Shown here: positions 1,121 to 21,675 of the stretch, in pieces
How positions within the stretch are numbered: the stretch's first letter is position 1
Layout of the letters: each line of letters opens with the position of its first letter
IMG/VR virus record: IMGVR_UViG_3300042387_000948
Span: 124,001-188,000 of that record
Strand: one strand, 5' to 3'
Length of the DNA: 64,000 nt
Notes under the pieces: model-generated
What the model saw: the letters and a program-made list of their open reading frames with translations, nothing else
Told to the model about the DNA's origin: nothing
Databases searched by the model: none
Made by a program: the position numbers and the translations under genes

Positions 1121-1140
1121 CTTATTTTTCTTATGTTATT

Positions 1141-2227: not shown

Positions 2228-2698
2228 TTATTTATTTAAATATTCCTTTAATGTATCTTTTTTAATTACAATTTCTGAAATTTGTTTTATACCATCCATA
2301 TTATATGTTCTATATATGTTTTTTCTTCCCATAATAGTTGAATTGCCATTTACATATTTACTGAATAAAGAACTACCATTTCTATCACTTCTAATCATAA
2401 TATCATCCAATCTTTTATTTTCATCTATTTTTTCGTTAGTCAAACTTTTTTGAAATAATTTTTTCAACCACATAAAAAATTTATCAGGTTGTATTTCGCT
2501 TATTTTCAAACATACTAATTTTTTATCGTATATTCCTGTTACAAAAACATAAGCTGTTTTTGGACCTGATAAAGATTTTGCTGTTCCGTCTGCATACTGA
2601 TAATAAACTATTTTATAGATATTTTTAGGTCTCAACAATATTTTTGATATTGGGTCTTCTTTTTCTATAAATGGTTTATATTGTAAGCTAAATGACAT
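2228..2698 (-). CDS. Hypothetical protein
   Basis: 156-aa ORF tightly packed in the minus-strand operon. Confidence 0.7.
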   Translation of the reverse strand: MSFSLQYKPFIEKEDPISKILLRPKNIYKIVYYQYADGTAKSLSGPKTAYVFVTGIYDKKLVCLKISEIQPDKFFMWLKKLFQKSLTNEKIDENKRLDDIMIRSDRNGSSLFSKYVNGNSTIMGRKNIYRTYNMDGIKQISEIVIKKDTLKEYLNK

Positions 2699-2699
2699 T

Positions 2700-3992: not shown

Positions 3993-3995
3993 AAC

Positions 3996-5381
3996 TTATT
4001 TAATTTTAAATACTTCAAATCTTTCTCTTGGTTTCCAATTTTCAAAGGTAGTTTCTATACCTTCTACTAATGTATCACACATATTTGTATGAGATAATCC
4101 CATATTTCCTAAAAACTCTTCTCTACCTCTTAAACCGGCAGCTTTTCTATCAGGTTTTGGTGTGTTATAAACTTTCTCAATTACTTCCGCAACTTCGTAG
4201 TTATCAACTCTATCATCCCAAATATATGGAGTTGGTACTGAACCAGCTAATGCCAATGCTCTACTCCAAATTGGATATGCCCACTCACCATGCTCTAACT
4301 TACCTTCCCACTCTCTCCATTGGTGTAATGAACCAATCTTAATGTAATCTTCGTGCGTTAGGTATTTACCATCTAACTTAAATCCACATTGGTCTTGCAA
4401 TCCACCAGTTACGTTTACAATGATTGGTGTTCCAGCTACTACCGATTCGGCAGTTGCTAATCCAAACCCTTCGTTGTTTGCTATGTTAATGGTGCAATCT
4501 GCAATGTTGTAAAGAAGATTGAGTTCTTCTACCGGCATTCTACTATCTGAAAATACTACATTATATTCAGATGCAATTGCATCAACTACTGCGGGTAAAT
4601 CAGTTCCGTTTTCATCCACAGGTTGTGTATGCATTAATAAACAAACTTTATCAGCTTTTTCTTTACCAATCTTATCACAAAATACCTTAAATGCATGGAT
4701 TACATCTGCTGGTTGTTTTCTTCTGATGTTACGATTTGACCAATATAAGATAAAATCATATTCTTTGCCTTTTAAGATTTTGTTACGGAATTCATCAGAT
4801 ACATCCGCAGGTTTGTAGATGTTTGAGTTAATACCATGTGGTACATAACCCACTTGCCAATCTGCTTTAGGTTTCCAAGTTGGTTTATCATCTAATGCAG
4901 ATAAACGTTTGATAATACCATAAGTTTGACGAGAGATACAACCAATCCAATCTGAACTTTCATAGAAGTTACGATTGTATAATGGGTCAGGTAAATCATC
5001 CCAAATTGCGTAGAATAAAAGTGGAACGTTTTGTCTAATTTCATGCTCTATATCATACAACCAAGTCCAATAGCGAGGGTCAGTAAAGTGTAGGATAGCA
5101 TCGGGTTGTTCGGTGTTAATCAGTTGGCGGATTAAATCTGCATTACCATAACCATTCCAAGGAAGAATCTTAACATTGGCATCTGCTACACCATAGTTTT
5201 TACGAATATCTTCACTTACATCTAATATTTTCCCAGCATCAGGGTGATTGATTGCGGCTCCTACCTGAAACCAATCGTATTTATCTACCGTTCCTAATAC
5301 TAACTCCTTTGACATTGTAGCAATACCACTTGCCATTCTCAAGTCATCTGATAGTAATAGAATTTTTTTCTTTTTTGCCAT
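3996..5381 (-). CDS. Glycosyltransferase, GT-B fold (GT4-like)
   Basis: ILLLSDD...SGIA N-terminus; NRNIRRKQP and NEGFGLATAESVVAGTPIIVNVTGGL motifs. Confidence 0.88.
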   Translation of the reverse strand: MAKKKKILLLSDDLRMASGIATMSKELVLGTVDKYDWFQVGAAINHPDAGKILDVSEDIRKNYGVADANVKILPWNGYGNADLIRQLINTEQPDAILHFTDPRYWTWLYDIEHEIRQNVPLLFYAIWDDLPDPLYNRNFYESSDWIGCISRQTYGIIKRLSALDDKPTWKPKADWQVGYVPHGINSNIYKPADVSDEFRNKILKGKEYDFILYWSNRNIRRKQPADVIHAFKVFCDKIGKEKADKVCLLMHTQPVDENGTDLPAVVDAIASEYNVVFSDSRMPVEELNLLYNIADCTINIANNEGFGLATAESVVAGTPIIVNVTGGLQDQCGFKLDGKYLTHEDYIKIGSLHQWREWEGKLEHGEWAYPIWSRALALAGSVPTPYIWDDRVDNYEVAEVIEKVYNTPKPDRKAAGLRGREEFLGNMGLSHTNMCDTLVEGIETTFENWKPRERFEVFKIK

Positions 5382-5384: not shown

Positions 5385-5936
5385 TTATTGTATTGTAATT
5401 TGTATTTTTGTTTTTGTCCCATCGGGTTGTGAATAAACTGCGTATTGAGGTACACATTTTAATTCGGTTTTTACTTTGTTTAACATATCTACATATTTTT
5501 TACCATAGCCAGGTTTTAGATATGCAATAGTTAAATGTGGGTGGTAATCTGGATACGATGTTGTGTGTGGTAGTTTTTGCAATTCTGCATTTGTTTCGTG
5601 CAATGCAGGACCAGATACATCAAACTTTAGTACATCAAATTTTTCGTTTTCAAAAAGTGATGGATTGTATCCTTTGCATTCACCATATCCAAAATTACCC
5701 AATATACCCTTTACATCATCAACTGATACATCGTTGTGTAATCCATATAAAAATGTAGTGTGAGGTTCATCTTCAATACCATATCCACCATTAGTATCTT
5801 CTTCGTAAAGATGCTGTGGATTTATAGCATCCTGAATTTTGAATACTTCTGGTACTGAAAAATACAACATAGCACACCCATAATCATATGTACCTTTTGA
5901 TTCTTTGATTGAATTAAGTAACGTTTTTAATTTCAT
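5385..5936 (-). CDS. 2H phosphoesterase (2'-5' RNA ligase / Acb1-gp57B-like)
   Basis: Two HxT motifs: EPHTTFLYG and YHPHLTIAY. Confidence 0.8.
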   Translation of the reverse strand: MKLKTLLNSIKESKGTYDYGCAMLYFSVPEVFKIQDAINPQHLYEEDTNGGYGIEDEPHTTFLYGLHNDVSVDDVKGILGNFGYGECKGYNPSLFENEKFDVLKFDVSGPALHETNAELQKLPHTTSYPDYHPHLTIAYLKPGYGKKYVDMLNKVKTELKCVPQYAVYSQPDGTKTKIQITIQ

Positions 5937-9497: not shown

Positions 9498-9804
9498 GTG
9501 TAAATAATTTTTGTTTTTGTTGCATTTCTCTACCTTTCTCTGTCATCTCTCTTGCAAATATCTTAAACACCTTCCCATCATTATGGGTAAATGTTATATT
9601 TGAATGTTCATTATTAGATATAGTGAATTGAACTTGTGGTTCATCATCACCCATATTTTCATCCGTCCATGCAAATACTTGTGGTTGGTTATCATCAAAT
9701 TGAAAACACCACTCACACTCTTCGTATTTATTTGGTTGTTTTATATTGATTGATTGTTTTGGAGAATATTCAATATCCTCAAATAACTCTAATTGTTTTC
9801 CCAT
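9481..9804 (-). CDS. Hypothetical protein
   Basis: 107-aa ORF in operon. Confidence 0.65.
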   Translation of the reverse strand: MGKQLELFEDIEYSPKQSINIKQPNKYEECEWCFQFDDNQPQVFAWTDENMGDDEPQVQFTISNNEHSNITFTHNDGKVFKIFAREMTEKGREMQQKQKLFTHESKN

Positions 9805-11018
9805 TATCGTCCTACTTCTTTTAAATATTTTGCTTTGAATTCATCCCAACCCATACCTATACCTTCAATATAGAATAGATGTTCGGGCTTAATTCTACCT
9901 TCATCATACAACTTAGAATATCTACTAATTGCATGTTTTTTCCACCATTTGTTAATGTAATCAATACCTTGCTCAAATTTAGGTTTCAATACCAACGCAT
10001 CTTCTTCAATTTGCTTACATAAGAACTCTCTTCCGTTTTCATACATCATAGCAAGATATACACCCCTCTTAAATCCGTGATGATATTCGTTTGCTTTGAT
10101 ACCACACTCTTTGAAGATTTGACCTAATATCTTTTGTTTAATACCACTTACAGGTCCATTAGCTTCATAACCCATATTAGCACCATTACGAGCTCTTTCA
10201 TCTGATATATTTTGCTTATACCATTCTGCTCTGTTTTCCTTTAACCATTGATGCCACGGGTCATAGAATTTATCATCCGGCTTTAAACTAATCTTACCAG
10301 CCGATTCTCCTAATGTTTTGAAAAGTGGAATACCATTATATTGTGAGTGAATACCATACAAAGATGTTGTACCAACTGCTACAAGAGTTTGACCATACTT
10401 TGTTTTCCAATGGTTTCTAACTTCAGGAACAGTAGTCATCATAGCAACTAACTTACCACCTAAGAAGTTATATCCTAATGGCTGTGTACATACAATAGTA
10501 GATGCTATTGTAGTATGATTTAACTTACCATCAACAAACTTATTATCTTTACTCCAACCAATGAAATTATCTCTAACCCCCATTGAAGTAACATCAGATG
10601 CCAATGAAATTTGTCCCAACAACTTTCCACTCACTCTATCTTTCACATTAATCTTAACATTTCTACCAGGGTTTGCTGTAAAATCCATTGTGTGAATCAT
10701 CCTACGGATTTGTGCCCATTTAGTAGATTCTTTTGGATTATCATCTACAATCTCAACATAAGGGTCTAACGATTCAATTTCTTTTATCGTTAGCTCCTTA
10801 TTGTTGATATCAGTTGGCTTCCATTGTAAATCATAATATGTAGCTATAAGGGATTTATCTTTAATCATTGTATCTCCCTGTAATTCTACCCATTTTTTGT
10901 ATAGAGTTTGTTCCTCCACACTCATAGTAAGTAGGTAATCCATATTTTCTATTAGATTTGCCTTCTCTCTATCAAAGTCAAATACAGGTTTTTCCGGTTC
11001 ACTATCCCAAAAGCTCAT
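9804..11018 (-). CDS. DUF4338 / DruA-like protein
   Basis: LLGQISLASDVTSMGVRDNFIGW, QPLGYNFLGGKLVAM, TTSLYG..SQYN and HGFKRGVY match DUF4338 as remembered. Confidence 0.7.
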   Translation of the reverse strand: MSFWDSEPEKPVFDFDREKANLIENMDYLLTMSVEEQTLYKKWVELQGDTMIKDKSLIATYYDLQWKPTDINNKELTIKEIESLDPYVEIVDDNPKESTKWAQIRRMIHTMDFTANPGRNVKINVKDRVSGKLLGQISLASDVTSMGVRDNFIGWSKDNKFVDGKLNHTTIASTIVCTQPLGYNFLGGKLVAMMTTVPEVRNHWKTKYGQTLVAVGTTSLYGIHSQYNGIPLFKTLGESAGKISLKPDDKFYDPWHQWLKENRAEWYKQNISDERARNGANMGYEANGPVSGIKQKILGQIFKECGIKANEYHHGFKRGVYLAMMYENGREFLCKQIEEDALVLKPKFEQGIDYINKWWKKHAISRYSKLYDEGRIKPEHLFYIEGIGMGWDEFKAKYLKEVGR

Positions 11019-11205: not shown

Positions 11206-11901
11206 TTATTTAATCTCTACCAAATAATAGTTCGATACATAATCTCCATCCGTAAATGATACGTGCGATAATCCTTTTGAAGAGATTTTCAATGAAGATG
11301 TTTTAGAACCTTTGTTAGCCATTAAGATAGCTTTCAAATACTTTGCAGAAAATGCAATTGGTTCGATATCATTAGTTGCAGTTGAATCTACATCCAATGA
11401 AATTCGGTTGGAGTTAATTGAAGAATATCCTAAAATAATCTCACCCTTACCACCTTTGTGAATAAATGTAAATGTATCTGCATCCGATAATACACCTTTT
11501 GATTTGATGAACTTATTTACAAAGTCATCATCCAAAGTGATTTCTGCATCAAACGGAGGAAGTGCTTTCAAATCAGGTACCGCAGGGATAACCGATGGTG
11601 CAGCTAACATATATTGTACTTTAGTTTTCTTATCGGAAAACTTTAATGCCCCAGTCACTTCTTCAATAGTGATAGCATCATCTAATACTGATAACAAACC
11701 TTTTAATTGTGATGTTGTGTAAATACCAAACTCACCATTTGGGAAATCCGATTCGGCAACACTTACATCACCTAATAAAGTTTTATCATCTGAAATCATT
11801 CTTACCGATAAGTTATTCTCATCGGATTTTACCATAACGGATTCAATCTCACCACCTAAGTTGTAACGACCAACGAAACCATCAAATTTGCTTCTGTTCA
11901 T
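11206..11901 (-). CDS. Sliding clamp (gp45/PCNA-like)
   Basis: 231 aa, repeated beta/alpha pattern, EFGIYTTSQL and YYLVEIK terminus; adjacent to polymerase and clamp loader. Confidence 0.8.
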   Translation of the reverse strand: MNRSKFDGFVGRYNLGGEIESVMVKSDENNLSVRMISDDKTLLGDVSVAESDFPNGEFGIYTTSQLKGLLSVLDDAITIEEVTGALKFSDKKTKVQYMLAAPSVIPAVPDLKALPPFDAEITLDDDFVNKFIKSKGVLSDADTFTFIHKGGKGEIILGYSSINSNRISLDVDSTATNDIEPIAFSAKYLKAILMANKGSKTSSLKISSKGLSHVSFTDGDYVSNYYLVEIK

Positions 11902-11941: not shown

Positions 11942-11973
11942 CAAAGATACAAATATTTTGTGAATATTCCAAC
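11942..11973 (-). promoter_or_regulatory. Bacteroidota-type promoter for the clamp operon
   Basis: GTTGG-N19-TATCTTTG on the minus strand. Confidence 0.65.
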
Positions 11974-14495
11974 TAAAAAGAGAAAAACTTTTCAGCTGTT
12001 TTTTGTGAGGAAAGAACCTCACCCCAACCCAATGCTCCATAGAAATCCTCTAACTTCTTTAGTAATTCCCTTTCAAAGATTTTATCATAATCGATGTAAG
12101 TTTTTACCAAATCCATAATTTGGTCTGAATCCTCATATCCCTTAAATCCCAACCCATCCAAACCATATGGATTTTGCTTTAGATATACCCACTTAATTTT
12201 ATCACCATCTTTCATTGGTTCGCAGGTATTTTGTATATTAAAGTGAGCTATTAGTTGGTTATGTGCAATTGCTGCCTTAACGTGCGCCGGAGTTCCACTA
12301 TTGAATTGAAACATTGCTCTATTATCCTTTTTCTTTGGTATGTATTTAGATAACTCTTTAACTGCTGAATTCTTAGCGATTGAAGTTACATCCATATTAA
12401 CTAAATCCTTTTTGAAATCATGTATCTTATCAGTTAGTACATCTTCCGTTTCACCTTTTAGAATATCAATTAGGATACCACTCATAAACTTACGGAATTG
12501 TGCAGGATATGATGAACGAACCACATCCAATCCTTTAACATCCAATCTATCGCATGGAATACCATTTTCCGCAATAATCCATTGTGCATATCGTTTCTTA
12601 GCAATCCAAATACCTGATTTAGATACAAACTCTTTTTTGATTTGGAATCTATGTTTGGTTTTATCTACATTGAATACTCTTTCCGATAATACATCATAAA
12701 AGTTATTTAAGAAATCCTGCGTTTCACCAGCAATTGTATCTACTTTCAATGCAATTTCAGTATCATTATCAGCTTTCCAATTCTCATATCTATGGTCTAA
12801 TATAGGTACTGCTGAAAAGAATACCGAATCCGTATCAATGTATATGTTGAAATCCTGTCCGGTTGTTCCTAACTCTTTATTGTATTTAATATTAGCCATA
12901 TCAGCCGTAGATTTAATTACAGTTTGACCTGTTGTTGTTACAGCTTCTGCATTATCAACATCATAGAAACGGAACGCAGGTAATCCCAATACTCCATATA
13001 ATGAGTTCAATAAAATCTTTTGTACTAACTGTCTTTTCTTATAGAATGCATATTTTTCTTTATCACCACTCTCACCAAATTGTTTTTCCAACTTACGGAA
13101 CTCCACACGTTGAGAGAACCACAAATCTAAAATATCAGGGATACAACCAGCTTTATCGGTTCTATACATTACACCATTAGATGATACCGAATACTTACTT
13201 TCTTCTAATAGTTTCTTTAAGTTTTCTTTTGATATCGTTCGGTTTCCAATAAAAAACTCATCAATTTCACCCTTCATATACTTTTGAGCATCCCAATTAT
13301 CAATCTTAGCTACCTTTGTTTCAGGTGATATGTTAAGAGTCATAATGATGGATGGGTATAGTGATGTTAAGTCCAAGTCATATATCCAATCATACTTACC
13401 AACGATAGGTGCTTTTACATATGCCCCAATAAATTTCTCTTGGTCATTATCTCTTAATGCCTGCATCCTTTCTTGTCTATCCGCAGGTTTGTTAGGTGCT
13501 ACAATGTTCTTTCTCTTTAAGTAAGTTAATAGTGCTCCCTCCAAATACTTTGATGAATAAACGAAATCTTCGTATGGAACGTGTCCAGCGTGGCAGATAC
13601 CCCTAGCAGTATCAATGAATTGTAGTTTTGCATCCATATCTACAACTAACTGAACATCCACTAAGTTATACTCAATAAACTTTTCAATATCATCTCTGAA
13701 TAGGATATCCAAATTACCTTTGTATTCAATCTTACCTCTACCCAACTCTCTCATTGCAATACTATCCAAACGATAGTTATCCAACTCCGTATATGTAAAG
13801 TTTTTGTACAATCCTAAATAATCCAAATAGGATACCCCCGCCATAAAGAATCTCTTACGATATGGTGACCAGAAACATTCTCCAATAGGTGATAATCGAT
13901 TAGCATGTTTTTGACCCAACACCCTCTTAATACGATTGTATAAATAAGGTGTATCAAAGTAATCAATGTTCCAACCTGTAACGATTGTGGGATTAATATA
14001 CTCATATAAATCTAAGTATTTAAGTATCATATCCCTCTCATCCACAAATGGAATTACAATTGCCGTATCGGTTTTCTTCTCCACCATCTTACCGCTCTTA
14101 TCCATAATAAGGACATAGTATTGGTCAGCTGCTGAATCATGTAAACCAATTGCGGTTAATTCATTTTCAGCTTTTTCAGTATCCGGCAATCCCGTCTCCA
14201 TCTCACACTCAATATCGTATGTTAAGATAACGTGCCCCTCCGATGGAACATCTGAATCCGTATAAGTATCAACCAATACTCTAGTAGTTTCGGCAACATC
14301 TGATTCAAACAAATTAGGGTCATCTCCCTTAAATTTGTATATTTTTGTTAGTTTATCACCATATAAAGATGTGTAATCACCTCTTTCGGCTTTTTCATAC
14401 GCATAACGAGTGTAAGGAAAACTTCTGTATCCCTGAACATCATCCCAAATGTGCACTAAATTCTTTTCTCTCTGATAATATACGTTCTGGTACAT
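11973..14495 (-). CDS. DNA polymerase family B (gp43-like)
   Basis: Exo I YDIE, GWN..FD, DLDLTSLYPS, KILLNSLYG, YIDTDS, KKRYA. Confidence 0.97.
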   Translation of the reverse strand: MYQNVYYQREKNLVHIWDDVQGYRSFPYTRYAYEKAERGDYTSLYGDKLTKIYKFKGDDPNLFESDVAETTRVLVDTYTDSDVPSEGHVILTYDIECEMETGLPDTEKAENELTAIGLHDSAADQYYVLIMDKSGKMVEKKTDTAIVIPFVDERDMILKYLDLYEYINPTIVTGWNIDYFDTPYLYNRIKRVLGQKHANRLSPIGECFWSPYRKRFFMAGVSYLDYLGLYKNFTYTELDNYRLDSIAMRELGRGKIEYKGNLDILFRDDIEKFIEYNLVDVQLVVDMDAKLQFIDTARGICHAGHVPYEDFVYSSKYLEGALLTYLKRKNIVAPNKPADRQERMQALRDNDQEKFIGAYVKAPIVGKYDWIYDLDLTSLYPSIIMTLNISPETKVAKIDNWDAQKYMKGEIDEFFIGNRTISKENLKKLLEESKYSVSSNGVMYRTDKAGCIPDILDLWFSQRVEFRKLEKQFGESGDKEKYAFYKKRQLVQKILLNSLYGVLGLPAFRFYDVDNAEAVTTTGQTVIKSTADMANIKYNKELGTTGQDFNIYIDTDSVFFSAVPILDHRYENWKADNDTEIALKVDTIAGETQDFLNNFYDVLSERVFNVDKTKHRFQIKKEFVSKSGIWIAKKRYAQWIIAENGIPCDRLDVKGLDVVRSSYPAQFRKFMSGILIDILKGETEDVLTDKIHDFKKDLVNMDVTSIAKNSAVKELSKYIPKKKDNRAMFQFNSGTPAHVKAAIAHNQLIAHFNIQNTCEPMKDGDKIKWVYLKQNPYGLDGLGFKGYEDSDQIMDLVKTYIDYDKIFERELLKKLEDFYGALGWGEVLSSQKTAEKFFSF

Positions 14496-14508
14496 CGTGT
14501 CTTTTTAA

Positions 14509-15621
14509 TTAATCTTCAAATATTCTAGCGGTTTTTTCAAAATTGTTTTCAATATCCCAACTTTTCAATGAGTTTTCCCATAATAGAGCTTTTGATATTG
14601 CACTTACATCGGGTCTTTCAATTATTCCATCTAATAACCCAACAACCACTTCTTTAAAATGCTCCTTCGAATTATATAGTAATGGATAATCATTGCCAAC
14701 CATTTCAGGGTAACATAATCCGTTTGGTAGTACATATGGAACACCTCTACTCAATCCATCCGTTGTACTCATACTCCATGCTGAATATGTTTGGAAACAA
14801 CCAACTCCAAAATGAGCTTGTGATAGTTGATTCATATACACATTTCTATCAGCATGTCCAATGTATTTTGTGTATGGTTTTTTCATATCTTTTAAACTAG
14901 TCCACACCTCAAAATCCTGTCTTTCTTTCCATAGATTATCCATAGTTTCAAAGAACCATTCGGAACCTGTATATACCCCTTCCCTATGATTGAATACAAT
15001 GGTTTTTGGCTTGTATTCTTTTGGTTCTACGAATTCATCCGTACCCAAATACCAAGGCTGAATAATTCTATCTAATTTTTCAATGATATGTGGTTGAAAA
15101 TCTTCAGATACTCTTTTAATTACCAAATCCTTAACCCATTGAGAGTTTACACCACATACTTTCATATCCAACATACCCTTTACGTTTTTCCAAAAAGAGT
15201 TATCATCCCTAGCACCATTATCTTTAATTTCCCACCAATGGCAGTATCCGATAATAGGTTGAGTTTTGTTGTAAATACGAGTAATTTTATATTCGTGAGT
15301 CCATTCAGGTAAATGTGACCAAATTAGATTAAAGTTTTCCTTATCAATCAATCGTTGGAAGAATTTGTATGGATAGTTTACCCTCATTTTTGGTGGGAAG
15401 CAATCTAATCCATCCATTCTACGAAGTGATACGTTTGGATATTCGAATGTATTGATAATACCAGGATGGTTATCCATGTCAGGATATGGGAGTACAAACT
15501 CCCACTCCTTACCTATTTTTGTGTTATCTAAAAATGCTTTAAATACCAGCAAAAATGAATCTCTATTTATATCTTTGTTAGAGCCAAAGTTTGTATAATT
15601 TGGTATTACCAATACTTTCAT
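14509..15621 (-). CDS. Glycosyltransferase, GT-B fold; possibly DNA-acting
   Basis: KVLVIP N-terminus, IVFNHR, AWSMSTTDGLSRGVPYV, YPEM; sits 13 nt upstream of polB. Confidence 0.75.
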   Translation of the reverse strand: MKVLVIPNYTNFGSNKDINRDSFLLVFKAFLDNTKIGKEWEFVLPYPDMDNHPGIINTFEYPNVSLRRMDGLDCFPPKMRVNYPYKFFQRLIDKENFNLIWSHLPEWTHEYKITRIYNKTQPIIGYCHWWEIKDNGARDDNSFWKNVKGMLDMKVCGVNSQWVKDLVIKRVSEDFQPHIIEKLDRIIQPWYLGTDEFVEPKEYKPKTIVFNHREGVYTGSEWFFETMDNLWKERQDFEVWTSLKDMKKPYTKYIGHADRNVYMNQLSQAHFGVGCFQTYSAWSMSTTDGLSRGVPYVLPNGLCYPEMVGNDYPLLYNSKEHFKEVVVGLLDGIIERPDVSAISKALLWENSLKSWDIENNFEKTARIFED

Positions 15622-15622
15622 A

Positions 15623-17410
15623 TTATGCGGATAAATCTAATGTGTCAACTATTTGATAAATTGTATTAATTGATTTCTCAACTACCTTTTTTTCAGAACC
15701 ACTAAGTGTATCTAATATAGCTTCATTTCGTTCAGCTATCATAATCCAATATTCATTTGGTGAGCAATTCCAATTTTTATTTTTCTGATTACCATCTAAG
15801 TTATCATCTATCATTCCTAAAAATCCATCTTTAGCATCACCACCAGTACTATGCATTTGCTTATGTAACCAATGAAGTCCTTCTCCATTTGAAAAATTTA
15901 CAATAGATATGTTATCTGTGGATAATGGGAATAGTTTTAATCTAGCTACCATTGATTCACTTTCAATGAAAGATGCAGTTCTTTTCAATACATTTTCACG
16001 ATATTCAGCTTGTAAATCTCTATCTTTTGAACGATTTTTAATGTCCGAATCTACATTTTGAAATACATATTGAAAGATTTTATCCCAACGAGAATTAGCA
16101 CTTGTTGAATTATAAGTGGAAGCTTCTGTTCCAAAGTATTTCCAAACAGGAACTTTTTTATTATTATGGTTTACATCCGAATTCAAAAGTCTTGCATACT
16201 CATTGATAACTTTATTTACAACCTTAGAAATACCCATTTTTGGATTCTTTCTTTTAAAATAAAGTGCCAAACTAACCATCAATATACCGGTATGATATTT
16301 TTTAATATGAAGGTCTTCCATAGCTTGGATTTTAGAACCTCCTATTTTTTTCCAATCATTAACTAAGCTATTAATTGTTGTAGTAATTGTAGTCCACTCT
16401 TCTGATTCAAATACAAGTTTATATTCTTTTTCATAAAATGAAACAATATCTAAATAACTAGCATCTGTAATTGTTTTCTTAAACATATCTCTCCAATAAT
16501 CAGTTTCTTTTCCATCATCTTTACCATTTTCAAAACTAACTACCATATTATTAAACTTTTTAAACTCATCGATAGTATCACAATATCTAGAACCTATATA
16601 TGCCTGAAGAATTGGAATCATTTTGGCTACTTTATGCTTATCAGCATAACTTTGATGACCAAACATTAATTTACCTTTATTAAAGTTATCAGTTCCAATT
16701 TTATTGGTAAAATATTCAAGTAGTTTATCTCCACAATAATGAGTTTTATATTCATTTGTTCGTTTTAGTGGAGTCATATAATAGTTATAAGCCAACCAAG
16801 GGTTTGGTTGTCTATTACAATTCATCATATCTTTTTCAAATTGACGGGTTGTTTGTAAACTAACTACAAATCCAATCTTAACATTATTATAAAACTCTTT
16901 AAACTCATCGGATGATTCTACCACAGACTTCAAAGAGTAAGCGTAGTCTAATTGTTCTTCTTTTTTTGAATTAAAAAAATTGCGAATTAAATTTATCAAA
17001 TACTTATCGTCTTCATTATTTATATCATAATGCAATATGATATCATCGCACATATTCAACCATTCCTTTCCATTAAGAACTTCGTTGGTATAATATTTTC
17101 CAAATGTTAATGAAAACATAGTTCCATTATCACGAATAAATCCAACTTTCGATGGATTATCTTTTAAAATACTTACCAGTAATTGACCTTTTTCTGAAAT
17201 ACCGGTCATATAACGAATTAAATGATGAACTTTACCATAATACTTTATTTTTGTATCTAAATCTTCATCACGATTTCCTTCATTATCTAATTGTTTAGCT
17301 TCAATAAGATATTTACATTCATTGAATGTAACTACTCCTATTTGTTTTACAAACATAGCAGGTTTTTGTTTGTTATTACCTACATACTTAATTGATTCTT
17401 TTAATTCCAT
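15623..17410 (-). CDS. Hypothetical 595-aa protein; possible degenerate DUF262 + HNH
   Basis: Weak matches only: IRDNGT, QFEKDMMNCN, and C-terminal HWLHKQMHSTGG...DDN. The ORF is secure; the function is tentative. Confidence 0.4.
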   Translation of the reverse strand: MELKESIKYVGNNKQKPAMFVKQIGVVTFNECKYLIEAKQLDNEGNRDEDLDTKIKYYGKVHHLIRYMTGISEKGQLLVSILKDNPSKVGFIRDNGTMFSLTFGKYYTNEVLNGKEWLNMCDDIILHYDINNEDDKYLINLIRNFFNSKKEEQLDYAYSLKSVVESSDEFKEFYNNVKIGFVVSLQTTRQFEKDMMNCNRQPNPWLAYNYYMTPLKRTNEYKTHYCGDKLLEYFTNKIGTDNFNKGKLMFGHQSYADKHKVAKMIPILQAYIGSRYCDTIDEFKKFNNMVVSFENGKDDGKETDYWRDMFKKTITDASYLDIVSFYEKEYKLVFESEEWTTITTTINSLVNDWKKIGGSKIQAMEDLHIKKYHTGILMVSLALYFKRKNPKMGISKVVNKVINEYARLLNSDVNHNNKKVPVWKYFGTEASTYNSTSANSRWDKIFQYVFQNVDSDIKNRSKDRDLQAEYRENVLKRTASFIESESMVARLKLFPLSTDNISIVNFSNGEGLHWLHKQMHSTGGDAKDGFLGMIDDNLDGNQKNKNWNCSPNEYWIMIAERNEAILDTLSGSEKKVVEKSINTIYQIVDTLDLSA

Positions 17411-17436
17411 ATTTAAGGGGGTTATTGTTTATATAA

Positions 17437-17468
17437 TAAAGATAAGTAAAATAAATGATATTTCCAAA
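17437..17468 (-). promoter_or_regulatory. Bacteroidota-type promoter (variant -7)
   Basis: TTTGG-N19-TATCTTTA. Confidence 0.6.
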
Positions 17469-17472
17469 TATT

Positions 17473-18273
17473 TTACCAAAAATTTTCAGTACCTTCAGGT
17501 ACTTCGTATGTTGTTAAATGATGTACTACTTCTGTATTATAAGATGCAGTATCTTTGGGGTATGGCTTGATTTCATGCTTCAATCTACTCATCAAATCTT
17601 TCTTCTCCCGCTTATCTTGCGCAATTATCTGAACGTACCTATGTTTTGGTGGTTCTTCTCTTCTCCAAAATTCTTTGTATCCTTCTTTACCAATTTCGTT
17701 TTGTAAATGTGCTAAATTACCACTACCCCATAAAGAGAATACTGTCCTACTATGAATCCATTTGTAAGGGTCTTTACTTAATGAGATACCCCAATTTGGC
17801 ATTAGTGCTATATCGGATGATAATCCTTGATAAATCCAATTTGTAGCTTGGTAGATACCACCTAAATGTGCTTGTCCATTGTCTGCATATGATAGGAGTA
17901 CTTTGATTGCTTTATCGTTTTCTTTTAACCATTTGAATGTCTGTCCTAATGCAAATGATTCGATGTTAGAACCATAACCATCATCACAATATAGACGAGT
18001 TAGTTCTAAAATGTTATCTTTGGTTAATCCTTCACAAATTGATGTTGATGCTTTTGCTCCCACTGGGAATCCATAAATTACACAACCTATTAATCTATCT
18101 CCATCAAATGTATTAGCATCATCGGATTTGTAATAAATTCCTAATGCGTATCTACAAGCTGTCCAAGCGTGCGTATAGTGTTTCTTTACAATAATATCTT
18201 TTGCTATGTTTTTAGCTATTGGGTGAACATACACCTTACTAACATCACAATAATCTTTTCCTTCTACTTTCAT
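17473..18273 (-). CDS. Mom-like DNA modification enzyme (GNAT fold), copy A
   Basis: IIVKKHY, LIGCVIYG, LELTRL, SNIES, LSYAD, HLGGIYQATNWIYQG, PKHRY. Confidence 0.85.
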   Translation of the reverse strand: MKVEGKDYCDVSKVYVHPIAKNIAKDIIVKKHYTHAWTACRYALGIYYKSDDANTFDGDRLIGCVIYGFPVGAKASTSICEGLTKDNILELTRLYCDDGYGSNIESFALGQTFKWLKENDKAIKVLLSYADNGQAHLGGIYQATNWIYQGLSSDIALMPNWGISLSKDPYKWIHSRTVFSLWGSGNLAHLQNEIGKEGYKEFWRREEPPKHRYVQIIAQDKREKKDLMSRLKHEIKPYPKDTASYNTEVVHHLTTYEVPEGTENFW

Positions 18274-18578
18274 ATTTTACCAGAAGCCATCTTCTTCTTT
18301 ATTGTCATTTTTTTTTTAGCTACCGGCTTTTTCTTTTTCTTCCGTTTAGCATCCAACTTAGCGAACGCATCATGTAACTCACCTAATTTACCTTCTGCTT
18401 TTGGTTTTTTTGGTGATTTGTTTTCTTTAAGATATTCAGCTGTCCATTTGATTTCAACCGATACAGGTCCATTTTGGAATTTGTTGGTATCATACTTCCA
18501 AACCATTGTACAATCCTCATCTTTATAAACTCTTTCAAATTGTGTTGCGTTTGGTACTTCTATTAGTTTTTTAGCCAT
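18270..18578 (-). CDS. Hypothetical protein with Lys-rich C-terminus
   Basis: 102 aa; VWKYDTNKFQNGPVSVEIK; basic tail. Confidence 0.7.
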   Translation of the reverse strand: MAKKLIEVPNATQFERVYKDEDCTMVWKYDTNKFQNGPVSVEIKWTAEYLKENKSPKKPKAEGKLGELHDAFAKLDAKRKKKKKPVAKKKMTIKKKMASGKI

Positions 18579-18582
18579 AGTA

Positions 18583-18614
18583 CAAAGTTACAAAATTAAT
18601 TTGATATTTCCAAA
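18583..18614 (-). promoter_or_regulatory. Bacteroidota-type promoter
   Basis: TTTGG-N19-TAACTTTG, overlapping the 3' end of Mom copy B. Confidence 0.75.
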
Positions 18615-19369
18615 TTTACAGGTTCCATTTTATGAACCTCATCAATGATATCTAACTCTACTTTTGGGTATGGGAATACCTCATGTTTAAGTGAGTTTAT
18701 AAATGCTTTCTTTTCTTTCTTATCTTTGGTTAGAATATACACATATCTATGCTTGCGAGGTTCTCTCTTAATCCAAAATGGAGATGTTACCATTGTCTGA
18801 ATTATCTTAGGGTCATTTGTTCCGTATTTTACATAAGATGTTCTACTATGATGCCACTCATCATCTTCGTTCCATTTGAAACTCCAACTGTCACTCCATC
18901 TGATTTTGTTACCCTGATAAATCCAATTGGTAGCTTGATATACTGTTCCTAAATGTCCAGCATTTGGGTCTGAATATGATATTAGTGCTTTGATTCTAGG
19001 TACATTCTTTCGTAACCATTCAAACGATTGTCCAACAAACCAACTCTCAATGTTAGAACCATATCCATCAAATACAAATAATCGGGTCAATTCTAACACA
19101 CCATCTCTTGGGAGTAACTCCGATATCGATGCTCCCGCGTTTCTACCAACCGGGTCACCATAACATGCAACTCCAACTAATTGTTCGTTTACACCACTAA
19201 AGAAATTATGTTCATCTTCGGATATGTAAAACAAACCAATAGCATAGGATACCTTCGTCCATATCCCACTATAATGGTTATTTACAATGATATCCTTTGC
19301 TATGTTTTTGTTTATCTCTCTAATTGAAAATTTAGAGATATCGCAATATTGTTTACCTTCTATTTTCAT
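18596..19369 (-). CDS. Mom-like DNA modification enzyme, copy B
   Basis: IIVNNHY, LVGVACYG, LELTRL, SNIES, ISYSD, HLGTVYQATNWIYQG, RKHRY. Confidence 0.85.
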   Translation of the reverse strand: MKIEGKQYCDISKFSIREINKNIAKDIIVNNHYSGIWTKVSYAIGLFYISEDEHNFFSGVNEQLVGVACYGDPVGRNAGASISELLPRDGVLELTRLFVFDGYGSNIESWFVGQSFEWLRKNVPRIKALISYSDPNAGHLGTVYQATNWIYQGNKIRWSDSWSFKWNEDDEWHHSRTSYVKYGTNDPKIIQTMVTSPFWIKREPRKHRYVYILTKDKKEKKAFINSLKHEVFPYPKVELDIIDEVHKMEPVNLEISN

Positions 19370-19569
19370 AAACTACCAGACCAAAATTCGTTTAGATGAG
19401 TCCAAGTTTTACGTTGGATAATTTTTAACACATTTGATGGTGATACCTTATTGTTTCGGGCAATCACTTTAATATTCCTATGACCCATTTGCCATAGTCT
19501 TCTAATTTGTAACACCTGCTCATCCGTAAGTTTGGCAGATGGGTGCGTTTGACCCCTTAATATTCCCAT
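19366..19569 (-). CDS. Small HTH protein resembling the C-terminal DNA-binding module of HNH homing endonucleases
   Basis: GQTHPSAKLTDEQVLQIR...IARNNKVSPSNV..I..RKTWTH. Confidence 0.65.
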   Translation of the reverse strand: MGILRGQTHPSAKLTDEQVLQIRRLWQMGHRNIKVIARNNKVSPSNVLKIIQRKTWTHLNEFWSGSL

Positions 19570-19573
19570 GTAA

Positions 19574-19605
19574 CAAATATAACACTTTTATTTGGATTTT
19601 CCTAA
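19574..19605 (-). promoter_or_regulatory. Bacteroidota-type promoter
   Basis: TTAGG-N19-TATATTTG, 4 nt before the ATG. Confidence 0.7.
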
Positions 19606-19609
19606 TTTT

Positions 19610-19873
19610 TTATCCTAAATTTTCATTTATGGCAGTTTCATATACCATTTTAGATTGAGCTCCCACAATTCTTTTTACTTCCTTACCATCTTTAACTAAT
19701 AATACAGTTGGTACTGAACGGATTCCAAATTGAGATGCAACATCTGAACTATCATCAATATCGTATTCGTTGAAGGATACTCCACTAAATGAATTTTTTA
19801 CCTCATTAAATGTTGGTGCCAATGTTTTGCATGGGCCGCACCAACTTGCCGAAAATTTCTTAACTTCTAACAT
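19610..19873 (-). CDS. trxA: Thioredoxin
   Basis: WCGPC active site and IRSVPT. Confidence 0.95.
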   Translation of the reverse strand: MLEVKKFSASWCGPCKTLAPTFNEVKNSFSGVSFNEYDIDDSSDVASQFGIRSVPTVLLVKDGKEVKRIVGAQSKMVYETAINENLG

Positions 19874-19893
19874 ATTTTTATTTGTTTATTTGT

Positions 19894-21675
19894 TTATCCC
19901 TCACAACTTACACAGTCCGGGTCAGTTGCTCTTGCTGCAATATCACCTCTTAATACTGATTCGGTTCTCATATAATATAGGGTTTTTACTCCCTGCTTCC
20001 AAGCTTCCATAGTTACTTGATTAATCCATTTCGGGTCAGCGATTGATGGAAATGCTAAGTTTAGAGATACCGCCTGGTCAATGTATTGTTGTCTTATACC
20101 TGCCTGCTTTACCAAATCTAATTGGTTAATCTCTTTGAATGTACGGAATACATCCTTAACTGAATTACATTTATTCTGATGCTCTTCCGTAGTCACTTCG
20201 TTACATTGTACTAACTTACTATCCAAGAAACACCACTCATCTAAAAATGCTAAATCTTGCACCGAACCACCATCTTCTAATATTCTATCCCAAGTTTCTT
20301 TTGTATTTTTTCCAATCTTTTTCAAAACTCTTTCCAATTCAGGATTCTTACGGATAAACGTACCTTTAGAAGTTTGCTCCGTAAATACGTTAGCTGCCCA
20401 AGGTTCAATACCACTACTCACGTTACCACTCAATTTAGAGTTTGATACCGTTGGTGCTACTGCTCTTAGGTGAGTATTTCTGAAACCTGTATCTCTACAC
20501 CATAGGGGTTCTCCCAATTCAGCTGCCATATCTCTACTTGCTCTTTCCGATTCAATCTTAATTTGAGAGAATATTTTACGAGTTTCAAATTGTGCCTGCA
20601 ATCCTTCAAATGGAACACCTTTTTGTTGTAGGTATGTATGCCATCCTAAAACTCCCAATCCCAATGCTCTTCCTTTTGCCGCTGAACGAACTGAATTCTC
20701 AAATCCAACCAATCCCTTAGCTCTTTGAATAAACTCCTCTAAAACACCATCTAAAAACATCGTAGACGTGTACACTAAATCAGTATCTTTCCACTCATCG
20801 TATTTGGCTAAGTTTAGTGATGAAAGGCAACATACAAATGAGTGAGATTCATCAGTATGTAGAACAATCTCCGAACAAATGTTAGTCATAAACACTTTTA
20901 ATCCGTTCTTCTTATATGCTTCTGGATTTTGTTTGTTCACATTACCTTTAAACATAATATAAGGTTCTCCAGTTGCTTTTCTCTTTTGTAATAGTTTACC
21001 CCACTTTCTTCTTGCTTCGGATTCCCCCTCCTGCAACTTTCTCATAAACTTATCACCCACTACCGCACATTGGTGCATATTAAGTGATTGGCGGTTTACA
21101 TCACCCTTTGGTTCTCTAATCTCCAACCAATCTTCAAAATCTTTGTGTTCAATGTTCATATTCACCGAAGCGGCTCCTCTACGAACTGAACCCTGATTTG
21201 TTGCTAATATAGTTGAATCGTAAATCTTACAAAATGGAACTACACCATCGGATGTTCCATTACCAGTAATCTTTGCACCTGCTGGTCTGATTTGATTAAT
21301 ACCAATACCTACACCACCACCATGCTTTGCCAATAACATCAACTCCAAATTCTTATATCCAATCTCATAGATACTATCACCAACATCGATTCCAAAACAA
21401 GAGATTGGTAATCCTCTATCAGTACCTGTATTTGATAATACCGGTGTTGCTAAACATAACCATCCTTTCCAAATGTAATCAAAGAACTTTGTAGCAAGTT
21501 GTGGTTTACCCAATCTTCTAGCTACTGCCGTTGCAACTCTCCAATAGGCATCTTTTGGTTTTTCACCATCTAATAGATAACCTTTTGAGATTGTTTTAAC
21601 GTATATTTCCGTATTTCCCCACGATGGGTAATCAACATCGATTTCCCAACCGAATTCTTCTCCGTAATGCTTCAT
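19894..21675 (-). CDS. nrdA: Class I ribonucleotide reductase alpha subunit (no ATP cone)
   Basis: ATPVLSN, ISCF, TNICSE, APTVSNS, KTLYY, C-terminal CVSC. Confidence 0.96.
   Translation of the reverse strand: MKHYGEEFGWEIDVDYPSWGNTEIYVKTISKGYLLDGEKPKDAYWRVATAVARRLGKPQLATKFFDYIWKGWLCLATPVLSNTGTDRGLPISCFGIDVGDSIYEIGYKNLELMLLAKHGGGVGIGINQIRPAGAKITGNGTSDGVVPFCKIYDSTILATNQGSVRRGAASVNMNIEHKDFEDWLEIREPKGDVNRQSLNMHQCAVVGDKFMRKLQEGESEARRKWGKLLQKRKATGEPYIMFKGNVNKQNPEAYKKNGLKVFMTNICSEIVLHTDESHSFVCCLSSLNLAKYDEWKDTDLVYTSTMFLDGVLEEFIQRAKGLVGFENSVRSAAKGRALGLGVLGWHTYLQQKGVPFEGLQAQFETRKIFSQIKIESERASRDMAAELGEPLWCRDTGFRNTHLRAVAPTVSNSKLSGNVSSGIEPWAANVFTEQTSKGTFIRKNPELERVLKKIGKNTKETWDRILEDGGSVQDLAFLDEWCFLDSKLVQCNEVTTEEHQNKCNSVKDVFRTFKEINQLDLVKQAGIRQQYIDQAVSLNLAFPSIADPKWINQVTMEAWKQGVKTLYYMRTESVLRGDIAARATDPDCVSCEG

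What the first reader, a model, noticed from the sequence alone, without database searches (positions are those of the whole stretch)
14509..19605. Candidate DNA hypermodification island: two Mom paralogs, an unknown nuclease-like gene and a GT-B coupled to DNA polymerase
Seen: three small units, each with its own host-type promoter: [HTH + Mom-B], [basic ORF + Mom-A], and [595-aa ORF + GT-B + polB, gaps of 1 and 13 nt]. The Mom copies share MK.EGK.YCD.SK and KNIAKDIIV..HY, indicating a duplication that has since diverged. Known: Mu Mom makes N6-carbamoylmethyladenine to evade restriction, and T-even DNA glucosyltransferases are GT-B enzymes. This GT is unlike the GTs at 1-5 kb and lies 9 kb from them. 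Inference: a multi-step or dual-specificity base modification pathway, possibly acylation plus glycosylation. No hydroxymethylase or TET is present in the window to supply a GT acceptor.
Basis: partly seen in the sequence, partly recalled or inferred. Interest (0 to 1): 0.75.

Follow-up and report, generated by a model that had tools for sequence, protein, structure and literature searches.

The report
Phage Mom pair, glycosyltransferase, swappable nuclease
A lake-water phage carries two real copies of the Mom DNA-modifying enzyme next to a sugar-transferase whose constant partner turns out to be a different acyltransferase-type gene (DruA-like) beyond the DNA polymerase, with a rapidly swapped nuclease-like gene wedged in between; the Mom part is a known kind, the sugar-transferase/DruA/nuclease trio looks undescribed.

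Summary
Window 17473-18273 and 18596-19369 (minus strand) are two genuine Mom-family genes, 49% identical. Window 14509-15621 folds as a GT-B (GT4-like) glycosyltransferase. Window 15623-17410 is a DUF262(ParB-like)+HNH-like protein. The 1-nt and 13-nt gaps to polB are correct. The claimed separate host-type promoters are not above chance.

The interpretation needs revision. The Mom pair is an old, conserved tandem duplication of a known kind, since several Mom copies per phage are already on record. The GT is not tied to Mom. In 75 of 75 related viral loci with enough flank it co-occurs with a DruA/DUF4338 (GNAT-type) gene, here at 9804-11018 beyond polB and the sliding clamp. Mom is present in only 7 of 28 distant loci.

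The 595-aa gene is one allele of a hypervariable, optional cassette. Near-identical genomes hold alleles only 15-16% identical, or none.

The genome has a canonical ThyA. It has no TET/JBP, ThyX, DNA methyltransferase or TGT, so no classical sugar acceptor exists.

Best reading: momylation of adenine, plus a separate, uncharacterised DruA-GNAT + GT-B module, probably acting on DNA, with a swappable GmrSD-like nuclease. DNA glycosylation itself is unproven.

The parts
19366..19569 (-). 67-aa very basic HTH-like protein. It overlaps the Mom-B start by 4 nt and is conserved upstream of Mom-B in relatives. Possible regulator, occupying the position that Com has in phage Mu but not homologous to Com (no Cys residues).
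   Evidence: Weak HTH_7 hit (E 0.0095) and PHROG hits to the C-terminal parts of HNH endonucleases (3e-6). Sequence. pI 11.7. Synteny.
18596..19369 (-). Mom-B, a Mom-family GNAT. Predicted tRNA-dependent aminoacyl transferase acting on adenine N6 in dsDNA.
   Evidence: PF25680 6e-44 and PHROG 1384. Hits the Mu Mom structure 8bv8 at E 1e-10. Mu residues H58, Y59, R111, S124, D149, Y159 and W181 are conserved. R151 is N here, K in most orthologs.
18270..18578 (-). 102-aa lysine-rich basic protein. It overlaps the Mom-A start by 4 nt and is present only in the closest relatives.
   Evidence: pI 9.9. No family hit.
17473..18273 (-). Mom-A, a Mom-family GNAT and paralog of Mom-B (49% identity).
   Evidence: PF25680 1e-43. 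Hits 8bv8 at 1e-5. The same catalytic residues are conserved. R151 is G in 86% of orthologs.
15623..17410 (-). 595-aa protein with a DUF262(ParB/Srx-like) N-terminal domain, a helical middle and an HNH-like beta-beta-alpha C-terminus. It is one allele of a hypervariable, optional cassette immediately upstream of the GT.
   Evidence: AF2 model, pLDDT 83. AFDB clusters return HNH, DUF262 and GmrSD-N proteins at E 8e-5 to 6e-3. SspE is the top PDB hit (E 0.28). BrxU gives Z 5.4 over residues 22-187. Conserved residues N46, R47, K60, D94, G96 and N537. Cassette behaviour.
14509..15621 (-). 370-aa GT-B (retaining GT4-like) glycosyltransferase from a virus-restricted family. Its start lies 1 nt after the cassette stop, and its end lies 13 nt before polB.
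   Evidence: No match in 50,697 cultured phage records. 223 + 371 relatives in IMG/VR. Only 6 hits in 185,579 species genomes.
11973..14495 (-). Family-B DNA polymerase (gp43-like).
   Evidence: PF00136/PF03104 and PHROG 262. 50.7% identical to the Microcystis phage Mel-JY01 PolB.
11206..11901 (-). gp45-like sliding clamp.
   Evidence: Atlas feature and structure neighbours are gp45/PCNA clamps.
9804..11018 (-). 404-aa DruA/DUF4338-family protein (GNAT-type according to the literature). It is the conserved genomic partner of the GT.
   Evidence: PF14236 1.5e-20, above cut-off. PADLOC DruA 2.5e-15. Co-occurs with the GT in 75/75 loci and in MAG contigs. GNAT assignment from PMC10853773.

Best explanation
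The interval is the junction of separate DNA-conflict modules. They are embedded in the replication-gene block of an uncultured 207-kb freshwater T4-like myophage.

(1) HTH67-MomB-(basic ORF)-MomA is an anciently duplicated Mom pair. By homology to Mu Mom, each enzyme transfers an aminoacyl group from a charged tRNA to N6 of adenine in double-stranded DNA. The two copies have diverged, probably in sequence context or in donor, to widen protection against restriction.

(2) The GT-B glycosyltransferase works with the DruA/DUF4338 GNAT-type protein encoded beyond polB and the clamp, not with Mom. I infer a second, two-step modification: acyl or aminoacyl transfer by the DruA-like enzyme, then glycosylation by the GT. 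It would be made during replication, most likely on DNA.

(3) The 595-aa ORF is a GmrSD/BrxU/SspE-like DUF262+HNH protein sitting in a swap-in slot that is translationally coupled to the GT. I infer a nuclease that discriminates DNA by modification state. It would be used against host or competing phage DNA while the phage's own modified DNA is spared, and its alleles would turn over under an arms race.

Shown: family memberships, folds, conserved residues, synteny, cassette polymorphism, and the absence of other modification genes. Inferred: all substrates and activities.
For: Mom:
- Pfam and PHROG hits, a match to the Mu Mom structure, and seven of nine functionally tested Mu residues conserved in about 90 orthologs.
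- The Mu mechanism comes from PMC13219725.
- Multiple Mom copies per phage are known (PMC7824862).
- The pair is conserved in 43/47 close loci.
- No other DNA-modifying enzyme family was found in the genome: no MTases, TGT, Tet_JBP or ThyX, and ThyA is canonical.

GT with DruA:
- GT-B fold.
- A DruA-like gene is present in 47/47 and 28/28 loci with at least 5 kb of flank on both sides. It is adjacent in 16, across different genomic contexts and down to 37% GT identity.
- It is again adjacent in MAG contigs.
- DruA-like occurs without the GT in 31 cultured marine phage records, while the GT occurs in none. This fits the GT acting downstream of DruA.
- DUF4338 is a GNAT domain (PMC10853773).
- ParB_N-DruA fusions exist in viruses.
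- A GT-A (GT_PLOD) is added in the slot in some relatives.

Cassette:
- Alleles are 14-17% identical inside genomes whose flanks are 92-99% identical. Six distinct loci (L008, L017, L018, L020, L023, L061) have no insert. Borders coincide with the ORF start and stop.
- The same superfamily lies between DruA and GT in distant lineages.
- In lake metagenomes the cassette is a separate contig with lower depth than the flanks.
Against: - No direct evidence that any of these proteins touches DNA.
- The GT's best structural neighbours are small-molecule, lipid and polysaccharide GT4 enzymes (MshA, BshA, sucrose-phosphate synthase). The classical EX7E motif is only half kept (D288), and the protein is acidic (pI 5.9).
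- My own profile comparisons did not show DruA-like to be homologous to Mom. Its GNAT status rests on Pfam membership plus one paper.
- Part of the GT/DruA linkage could be inherited synteny of the replication block.
- Mu residue R151, essential in Mu Mom, is not conserved in either paralog.
- In the cassette superfamily the putative catalytic His is replaced by Gln or Arg in one subfamily. All fold matches for the 595-aa protein are weak (TM about 0.2-0.3, Z 5.4).
Confidence: 0.5

Rival explanations
1. The GT and the DruA-like protein act on something other than DNA. Candidates are a small metabolite, a tRNA nucleoside, a phage or host protein, or the cell envelope. Only the Mom pair would then modify DNA.
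For: The top structural neighbours are MshA, BshA, sucrose-phosphate synthase, PimA, WaaG and SenB, with Z 22-29. T4 AGT/BGT are absent from the top 50. A tRNA-queuosine mannosyltransferase is among the Swiss-Prot fold hits. No acceptor-making enzyme is encoded in the genome. The GT is acidic.
Against: - The GT and DruA-like genes sit inside the replisome gene block: polB, clamp, clamp loader.
- The GT family is almost entirely viral.
- The recurrent neighbour is a DUF262+HNH nucleic-acid-type protein.
- Viral ParB_N-DruA fusions exist.
- The phage HY126 glycosyltransferase (PDB 9ir0/9iqz), from a phage whose DNA carries arabinosylated 5-hydroxycytosine (PMC13326640), is itself a GT4-like fold hit at E 4e-10. 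Its acceptor was not checked here.
Confidence: 0.3
2. The 595-aa ORF is a selfish free-standing homing endonuclease with no functional tie to Mom, the GT or DruA. It has simply lodged next to an essential gene.
For: Its presence is patchy among near-identical genomes. The insert borders coincide with ORF boundaries. It lies next to polB and nucleotide-metabolism genes, as homing endonucleases do in T4-like phages. It has an HNH-like C-terminus.
Against: - The slot is usually filled, but by very divergent alleles (14-17% identity). This looks like allelic replacement rather than presence/absence.
- The protein is 2-3 times larger than typical free-standing homing endonucleases and carries a conserved DUF262-type domain.
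- The same superfamily keeps the same position relative to the GT in lineages where polB is elsewhere.
- Stop and start are 1 nt apart, which suggests coupled translation.
Confidence: 0.2
3. One reading: Mom-A, Mom-B, the 595-aa protein and the GT form one multi-step pathway in which the GT glycosylates the Mom product.
For: The genes are adjacent in this window and in most close relatives. Both Mom and the GT occur in all large contigs of the clade that were checked. An aminoacyl-derived side chain could in principle offer an acceptor group.
Against: - The GT family occurs without Mom nearby in 21 of 28 distant loci.
- The Mom pair travels with the thioredoxin and ribonucleotide-reductase genes and lies about 13 kb from the GT in one lineage.
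- The Mom pair is intact in loci whose slot content differs or is empty.
Confidence: 0.12

Closest known systems
Phage Mu Mom (PF25680; PDB 8bv8), a tRNA-Gly-dependent adenine N6 aminoacyl transferase
   Same: Same Pfam family, with a direct sequence match to the solved structure. H58, Y59, R111, S124, D149, Y159 and W181 are conserved. A small gene overlaps the start of Mom-B, as com overlaps mom.
   Different: Two tandem paralogs instead of one. The essential R151 and the dimer residue W48 are not conserved. The upstream small protein is an HTH-like basic protein, not the zinc-finger Com. The setting is a lytic T4-like phage. Donor and sequence context are unknown.
Multi-Mom jumbo phages and predicted Mom + endonuclease pairings (PMC7824862)
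   Same: Several Mom copies in one phage. A nuclease-type protein sits beside Mom, which has been read as a phage-borne restriction/modification logic.
   Different: Here the nuclease-like protein is a separate DUF262+HNH gene, not an REase fold fused to Mom. It is tied positionally to the GT rather than to Mom, and it is hypervariable.
GmrSD / BrxU / SspE (DUF262 + DUF1524 type IV restriction-like nucleases)
   Same: Same order of domains: an N-terminal ParB/Srx-like DUF262-type domain with QR-like and DGQQR-like motifs, a helical linker, and a C-terminal His-Me/HNH-like motif. Weak fold matches to BrxU, SspE and AFDB DUF262/HNH clusters.
   Different: No Pfam or PADLOC hit. The motifs are altered (NR and RDNGT/KDRGH). 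It is phage-encoded, in an allelic cassette coupled to a glycosyltransferase. The catalytic His is not universal in the superfamily.
Druantia type I DruA (PF14236, DUF4338)
   Same: The 404-aa protein passes the Pfam and PADLOC DruA models.
   Different: No DruB-E partners. It is encoded by a phage inside the replisome block and paired with a GT-B. Homologs occur in Pelagibacter and Synechococcus myophages at 25-33% identity.
Phage DNA glycosyltransferases (T4 AGT/BGT; the arabinosyl-5-hydroxycytosine system of RB69, DLP3 and HY126, PMC13326640)
   Same: GT-B fold. The HY126 GT (9ir0/9iqz) is a fold hit at E 4e-10. A variable extra GT in relatives recalls multi-sugar chains.
   Different: No sequence similarity. 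No hydroxymethylase, 5hoC synthase, TET or sugar-nucleotide pathway is encoded. The conserved partner is a GNAT-type protein instead of a thymidylate-synthase homolog.

Membership tests
Mom family (PF25680) | Profile HMM match above the curated cut-off | tested here: met
   149.8 and 150.5 bits against a cut-off of 27.1. Also found by the own-genome search.
Mom family (PF25680) | Residues shown to matter in Mu Mom: H58, Y59, R111, S124, D149, Y159, W181 | tested here: met
   All are conserved in Mom-A and Mom-B and in 82-100% of about 90 orthologs. Residue list from PMC13219725.
Mom family (PF25680) | R151 (essential in Mu) and W48 (dimer interface) | tested here: not met
   R151 aligns with G (Mom-A) and N/K (Mom-B). 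W48 aligns with N/S.
Mom family (PF25680) | Gly-tRNA-dependent formation of N6-carbamoylmethyladenine in dsDNA | not testable with these tools
   Needs LC-MS or in vitro assay.
GT-B / GT4 retaining glycosyltransferases | Two Rossmann-like domains with the GT-B topology | tested here: met
   AF2 pLDDT 88.6, pTM 0.87. VIA Z 28.7-22 to GT4 enzymes over about 320-340 residues.
GT-B / GT4 retaining glycosyltransferases | Pfam Glycos_transf_1 / Glyco_transf_4 profile match and the EX7E motif | tested here: not met
   No Pfam, NCBIfam or PHROG hit for the window protein. Only weak sub-threshold hits in distant 450-aa relatives. By eye, only the second acidic position (D288) of EX7E is kept among the invariant residues.
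T-even DNA glucosyltransferases (AGT/BGT) | Sequence or closest-fold relationship, and a hydroxymethyl-pyrimidine acceptor supplied by the phage | tested here: not met
   Not among the top 50 structural matches. ThyA is canonical (PPCH and GLPFNIASY motifs, TIGR03284 313 bits). No ThyX or Tet_JBP.
GmrSD/BrxU/SspE (DUF262 + DUF1524) | Profile match to DUF262/DUF1524 or to defence-system models | tested here: not met
   No Pfam, PHROG, NCBIfam or PADLOC hit.
GmrSD/BrxU/SspE (DUF262 + DUF1524) | Fold and domain order: N-terminal ParB/Srx-like domain, C-terminal His-Me finger | tested here: inconclusive
   AFDB clusters named HNH, DUF262 or GmrSD-N at E 8e-5 to 6e-3, but TM only 0.17-0.31. BrxU Z 5.4 for residues 22-187. 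SspE E 0.28. Predicted beta-beta-alpha at residues 512-545.
GmrSD/BrxU/SspE (DUF262 + DUF1524) | Conserved QR and DGQQR motifs, and HNH catalytic His and Asn | tested here: inconclusive
   N46-R47 and D94-x-G96 are invariant in 18 divergent members. N537 is kept in 17/18. H516 is kept in many members but is Q/R in one subfamily.
DruA / DUF4338 (PF14236) | Profile match above the curated cut-off | tested here: met
   74 bits against a cut-off of 27. PADLOC DruA 2.5e-15.
DruA / DUF4338 (PF14236) | Membership of a Druantia type I operon (DruB-E partners) | tested here: not met
   The neighbours are polB, the clamp, dUTPase and the clamp loader.
DruA / DUF4338 (PF14236) | GNAT fold / relationship to Mom | tested here: inconclusive
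   hhalign against Mom gave probability 1-6%. The literature calls DUF4338 a GNAT domain. Some Atlas DruA clusters also carry Mom hits.
Free-standing homing endonucleases | Patchy presence between conserved genes, and cleavage of the empty allele | tested here: inconclusive
   Patchy or allelic distribution is shown. Cleavage is not testable here.

The most novel reading that the evidence does not exclude
A DruA/DUF4338 GNAT-type enzyme and a dedicated virus-only GT-B form a previously undescribed two-step nucleobase hypermodification pathway: acyl or aminoacyl transfer, then glycosylation, without any hydroxymethyl or hydroxy pyrimidine precursor. It would be widespread in aquatic phages. A co-located hypervariable DUF262+HNH nuclease reads the modification state, making a phage-borne restriction/modification-like weapon against hosts or rival phages. 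If so, it would also suggest what DruA does in Druantia type I defence.
Probability: 0.25. Interest if true: 0.85.

Novelty: new variant of a known kind. Interest (0 to 1): 0.62.

Why it matters
Mom was only recently shown to use charged tRNA to modify DNA. A conserved, subfunctionalised Mom pair that lacks the Mu-essential R151 is a natural test bed for donor and sequence specificity.

More importantly, the GT-B/DruA-like pairing holds in 75 of 75 loci, has hundreds of viral relatives and has almost no cellular ones. It links a glycosyltransferase to the uncharacterised DruA domain of Druantia, and it gives a concrete two-gene system to express and assay.

The cassette upstream of the GT is an unusually clean example of allelic replacement. 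Alleles are 14-17% identical inside genomes that are 92-99% identical, and the cassette persists in lake populations over several years. This is the signature of an ongoing arms race in a lytic phage.

Tried and rejected
- Nucleotide search of 14000-20000 against cultured phages found nothing.
- Sequence searches of the GT and the 595-aa protein against PDB gave only noise.
- VIA wide search for the 595-aa model was dominated by helical-bundle noise. Only BrxU (Z 5.4) was meaningful.
- I tried three ways to show DruA-like is a Mom relative: BLASTP, hhalign in the Python box and hhalign on curated alignments. None was significant. A profile search of DruA-like against PDB also found nothing.
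- I considered that the 231-aa ORF between polB and DruA might be a third module component. It is a sliding clamp, so I rejected this.
- I considered a hydroxymethylase hidden in the thymidylate-synthase homolog. I rejected this because it passes the ThyA equivalog cut-offs and keeps the catalytic Cys and the dUMP-specifying Asn.
- The Koonin-group YprA paper held nothing on DruA function.
- The last protein search, on DruA-like, returned only close relatives and added no diversity.

Full report
**Setting.** The window is bases 124001-188000 of a 207,029-bp IMG/VR virus record that CheckV rates complete. Every gene of the region lies on the minus strand.
- The closest cultured relative by DNA polymerase is Microcystis phage Mel-JY01, at only 50.7% identity. 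T4-like cyanophages and Pelagibacter myophages are at about 30-33%.
- Near-identical sequence is held by at least 20 lake-water metagenome runs from 2020-2024. This is a persistent, uncultured freshwater T4-like myophage.

**Check of the observation.** The ORF coordinates and spacings are as reported.

| Feature | Coordinates |
|---|---|
| polB | 11973-14495 |
| 370-aa ORF (GT) | 14509-15621 |
| 595-aa ORF | 15623-17410 |
| Mom-A | 17473-18273 |
| basic 102-aa ORF | 18270-18578 |
| Mom-B | 18596-19369 |
| 67-aa HTH-like ORF | 19366-19569 |

- The 595-aa ORF stops 1 nt before the GT start, and the GT stops 13 nt before polB. The two small ORFs each overlap the following Mom gene by 4 nt.
- Both Moms match Pfam Mom at 1e-43 and 6e-44 and PHROG 1384. 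They are 49% identical, and the quoted shared motifs are present.
- The promoter claim fails. A sigma-70 consensus scan finds fewer sites than shuffled sequence (48 against 58.6 +/- 7.5). Only 17 nt separate Mom-B from the basic ORF.

**The Mom pair.**
- Both proteins hit the solved Mu Mom structure 8bv8.
- I aligned Mu Mom with 49 Mom-A and 42 Mom-B orthologs. The residues shown by mutagenesis to matter in Mu are H58, Y59, R111, S124, D149, Y159 and W181 (PMC13219725). All are conserved in both groups.
- R151, essential in Mu, is Gly in Mom-A orthologs and Lys or Asn in Mom-B. The dimer residue W48 is not kept.
- Each paralog has its own conserved group-specific positions. The order HTH67-MomB-MomA holds in 43 of 47 related loci with full flanks. 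The duplication is therefore old and both copies are under selection.
- Mu Mom transfers glycine from Gly-tRNA to adenine N6 in dsDNA, followed by an on-base rearrangement.
- More than 8000 Mom homologs have been mined from viromes, and phages with up to five Mom genes are on record (PMC7824862). A Mom pair is thus a new member of a known kind.
- The genome also encodes 24 tRNAs, including two tRNA-Gly(TCC). I do not claim that this is connected.

**The glycosyltransferase.**
- The 370-aa protein has no Pfam, PHROG, NCBIfam or PADLOC hit. It has no relative in 50,697 cultured phage records.
- It has hundreds of metagenomic homologs.
- With a 29-sequence alignment, AlphaFold2 gives a confident GT-B model: pLDDT 88.6, pTM 0.87.
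- Foldseek and VIA-align place it with retaining GT4 enzymes. These include sucrose-phosphate synthase (Z 28.7), MshA (28.4), BshA, PimA, PglA and WaaG.
- The phage HY126 glycosyltransferase is a hit at E 4e-10. A tRNA-queuosine mannosyltransferase appears among the Swiss-Prot models. T4 AGT and BGT are not in the top 50.
- In BFVD, the best matches outside its own family are Arthrobacter phage GTs at E 4e-15.
- Fold therefore confirms 'GT-B' but cannot name the acceptor. Taken alone, it leans towards non-DNA acceptors.

**No classical acceptor.**
- The genome's single thymidylate-synthase homolog passes the NCBIfam ThyA equivalog cut-offs. It keeps the catalytic Cys and the dUMP-specifying Asn.
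- There is no ThyX, Tet_JBP, N6/N4 or Dam or C5 methyltransferase, and no TGT/DpdA.

**What the GT is really linked to.** Downstream of polB lie a gp45-like clamp and then a 404-aa protein. This protein passes the Pfam and PADLOC models for DruA/DUF4338.
- I fetched 80 IMG/VR loci of close GT relatives (55-100% identity).
- After a profile search of 1.84 billion representatives revealed a wider ~450-aa subfamily, I fetched 80 loci of distant relatives (37-41% identity).
- Among loci with at least 5 kb on both sides of the GT, a DruA-like gene is present in 47 of 47 close loci and 28 of 28 distant ones. It lies within 5 kb in 66 and directly adjacent in 16.
- The distant loci have several different gene contexts, some without polB nearby.
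- Mom is present in 43 of 47 close loci but only 7 of 28 distant ones.
- In one close lineage the Mom pair sits about 13 kb from the GT, still next to the thioredoxin and ribonucleotide-reductase genes.
- Across 185,579 bacterial and archaeal species genomes the GT family occurs only six times. All six are short MAG contigs, again with DruA beside it wherever flank exists.
- Conversely, DruA-like genes occur without this GT in 31 cultured phage records, of Synechococcus and Pelagibacter myophages and related marine phages, near the clamp-loader genes.
- The asymmetry (GT never without DruA, DruA often without GT) fits a GT acting after the DruA-like enzyme.
- DUF4338 has been described as a GNAT domain (PMC10853773). 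Atlas clusters of DruA proteins sometimes also carry Mom hits, and viral ParB_N-DruA fusions exist.
- My own profile comparisons could not demonstrate homology between DruA-like and Mom.

**The 595-aa ORF.**
- It has no family hit. Its model (pLDDT 83) matches AFDB clusters named HNH nuclease, DUF262 and GmrSD N-terminal domain (E 8e-5 to 6e-3). SspE is the top PDB hit, and BrxU matches over residues 22-187. All of these are weak matches.
- The decisive finding is comparative. In genomes whose flanking Mom-A and GT DNA is 92-99% identical to the window (L012, L013, L075), the slot holds proteins of 614-669 aa that are only 15-16% identical to it.
- A profile built from 18 members recovers those and further members at E 1e-79 to 1e-191. 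They form one fast-evolving superfamily.
- Invariant N46-R47, K60 and D94-x-G96 resemble the DUF262 QR and DGQQR motifs. N537 lies in an HNH-like C-terminal motif. The preceding His is replaced by Gln or Arg in one subfamily.
- Other loci carry different families in the slot. One is a ~505-aa family with a weak HNH hit. One is a ~398-aa family. One arrangement has a superfamily member, a 99-aa ORF and a GT_PLOD-type GT-A. Six distinct loci have nothing, with Mom-A abutting the GT by 3-48 nt.
- Homology with relatives breaks at the cassette ORF's start and stop.
- In distant lineages the same superfamily lies between DruA and the GT.
- In lake metagenomes the cassette assembles as a separate 2104-nt contig whose ends match the cassette borders. 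Its depth is lower than that of the Mom flanks, as expected if co-existing strains carry other alleles.

**Expression.** A lake metatranscriptome holds contigs on the GT (96% identity) and on Mom-A (94%), from a related strain. Because DNA carry-over cannot be excluded, this is only weak evidence of transcription.

**Synthesis.** The interval is a real DNA-conflict locus, but it is not one pathway. I commit to the following.
- (i) Momylation of adenine by two diverged Mom enzymes. Confidence is high for family and chemistry type. Donor and motif are unknown.
- (ii) A separate DruA-GNAT + GT-B module, probably a second, two-step modification made during replication. Confidence is moderate to low for DNA as the target.
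- (iii) A swappable GmrSD-like DUF262+HNH protein coupled to the GT. It is probably a nuclease used against host or rival DNA. A selfish homing endonuclease is the main rival.

**Novelty.** The Mom pair is a known kind. I found no description of the GT-B/DruA-like/DUF262-HNH association. Full-text searches for DUF4338 returned four papers, none on phage glycosyltransferases. I rate the whole as a new variant of a known kind, with a 0.25 chance that it is a genuinely new hypermodification chemistry.

Noticed in passing
window 35027-35406 (-): A full-length tmRNA gene lies in a 455-nt gap between ORFs. Rfam RF00023 scores 99.6 bits against a gathering score of 47 (E 1e-39). ARAGORN gives a 26-residue tag peptide. 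So this is a phage-encoded tmRNA.
   Followed up: partly
genome G000:C1:70704-76445 (outside the window): A cluster of 24 tRNA genes plus one odd call covers 19 amino acids (no Ile). It includes two tRNA-Gly(TCC), two tRNA-Ser, and one each of Thr and Ala. This may be relevant because Mu Mom uses charged tRNA-Gly as donor.
   Followed up: no
window 5385-5936 (-): A 183-aa ORF has a sub-threshold match to the anti-CBASS protein Acb1 (PF23474, E 2.3e-5, 24.6 bits against a cut-off of 27). Going by the loci tabulated, it is absent from some near-identical relatives (L012, L075).
   Followed up: no
window 349-5381 (-): A second sugar-related block holds GT2 (349-981), a collagen-repeat protein (1141-2166), two unknown ORFs and a GT4 with a 'GT4-conflict' hit (3996-5381). 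The GT4 and the 430-aa ORF are conserved in relatives and lie near the GT in some distant lineages (L146 type).
   Followed up: partly
L014:9245-9994 (also L025, L039, L067, L024, L057): In some relatives a GT-A of the PLOD type (PF25342, 1e-27) sits directly upstream of the GT-B. It is often preceded by a cassette-superfamily member and a 99-aa ORF. This points to variable sugar decoration.
   Followed up: partly
L007:1928-2524; L041:13878-14489; L064:14543-15241; L137 (two copies): Relatives carry a third, shorter and more divergent Mom gene (about 200-230 aa) elsewhere in the replication block.
   Followed up: no
L146:3100-4305 and L146:7235-8002: One distant lineage has two DruA-like genes. 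The shorter one (255 aa) lies directly upstream of the GT.
   Followed up: no
genome G000:C1:14609-15760 (-) (= L090:1495-2646): The canonical thymidylate synthase is 383 aa, about 110 residues longer than usual because of internal insertions. A UvdE UV endonuclease and a weak peptide-deformylase-like ORF are its neighbours.
   Followed up: partly
window 50472-57200 and 59288-63859 (-): Two very large ORFs (2242 and 1523 aa) lie in stretches of raised G+C (0.43-0.46 against about 0.33). Long antisense ORFs there are typical of repetitive structural genes.
   Followed up: no
window 14671-14699 (-): The best promoter-like match of the region (TTGGCA-17-TATAAT, 11/12) lies inside the 3' part of the GT gene, about 175 nt upstream of polB. 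It may be an internal polB promoter or it may be chance.
   Followed up: no
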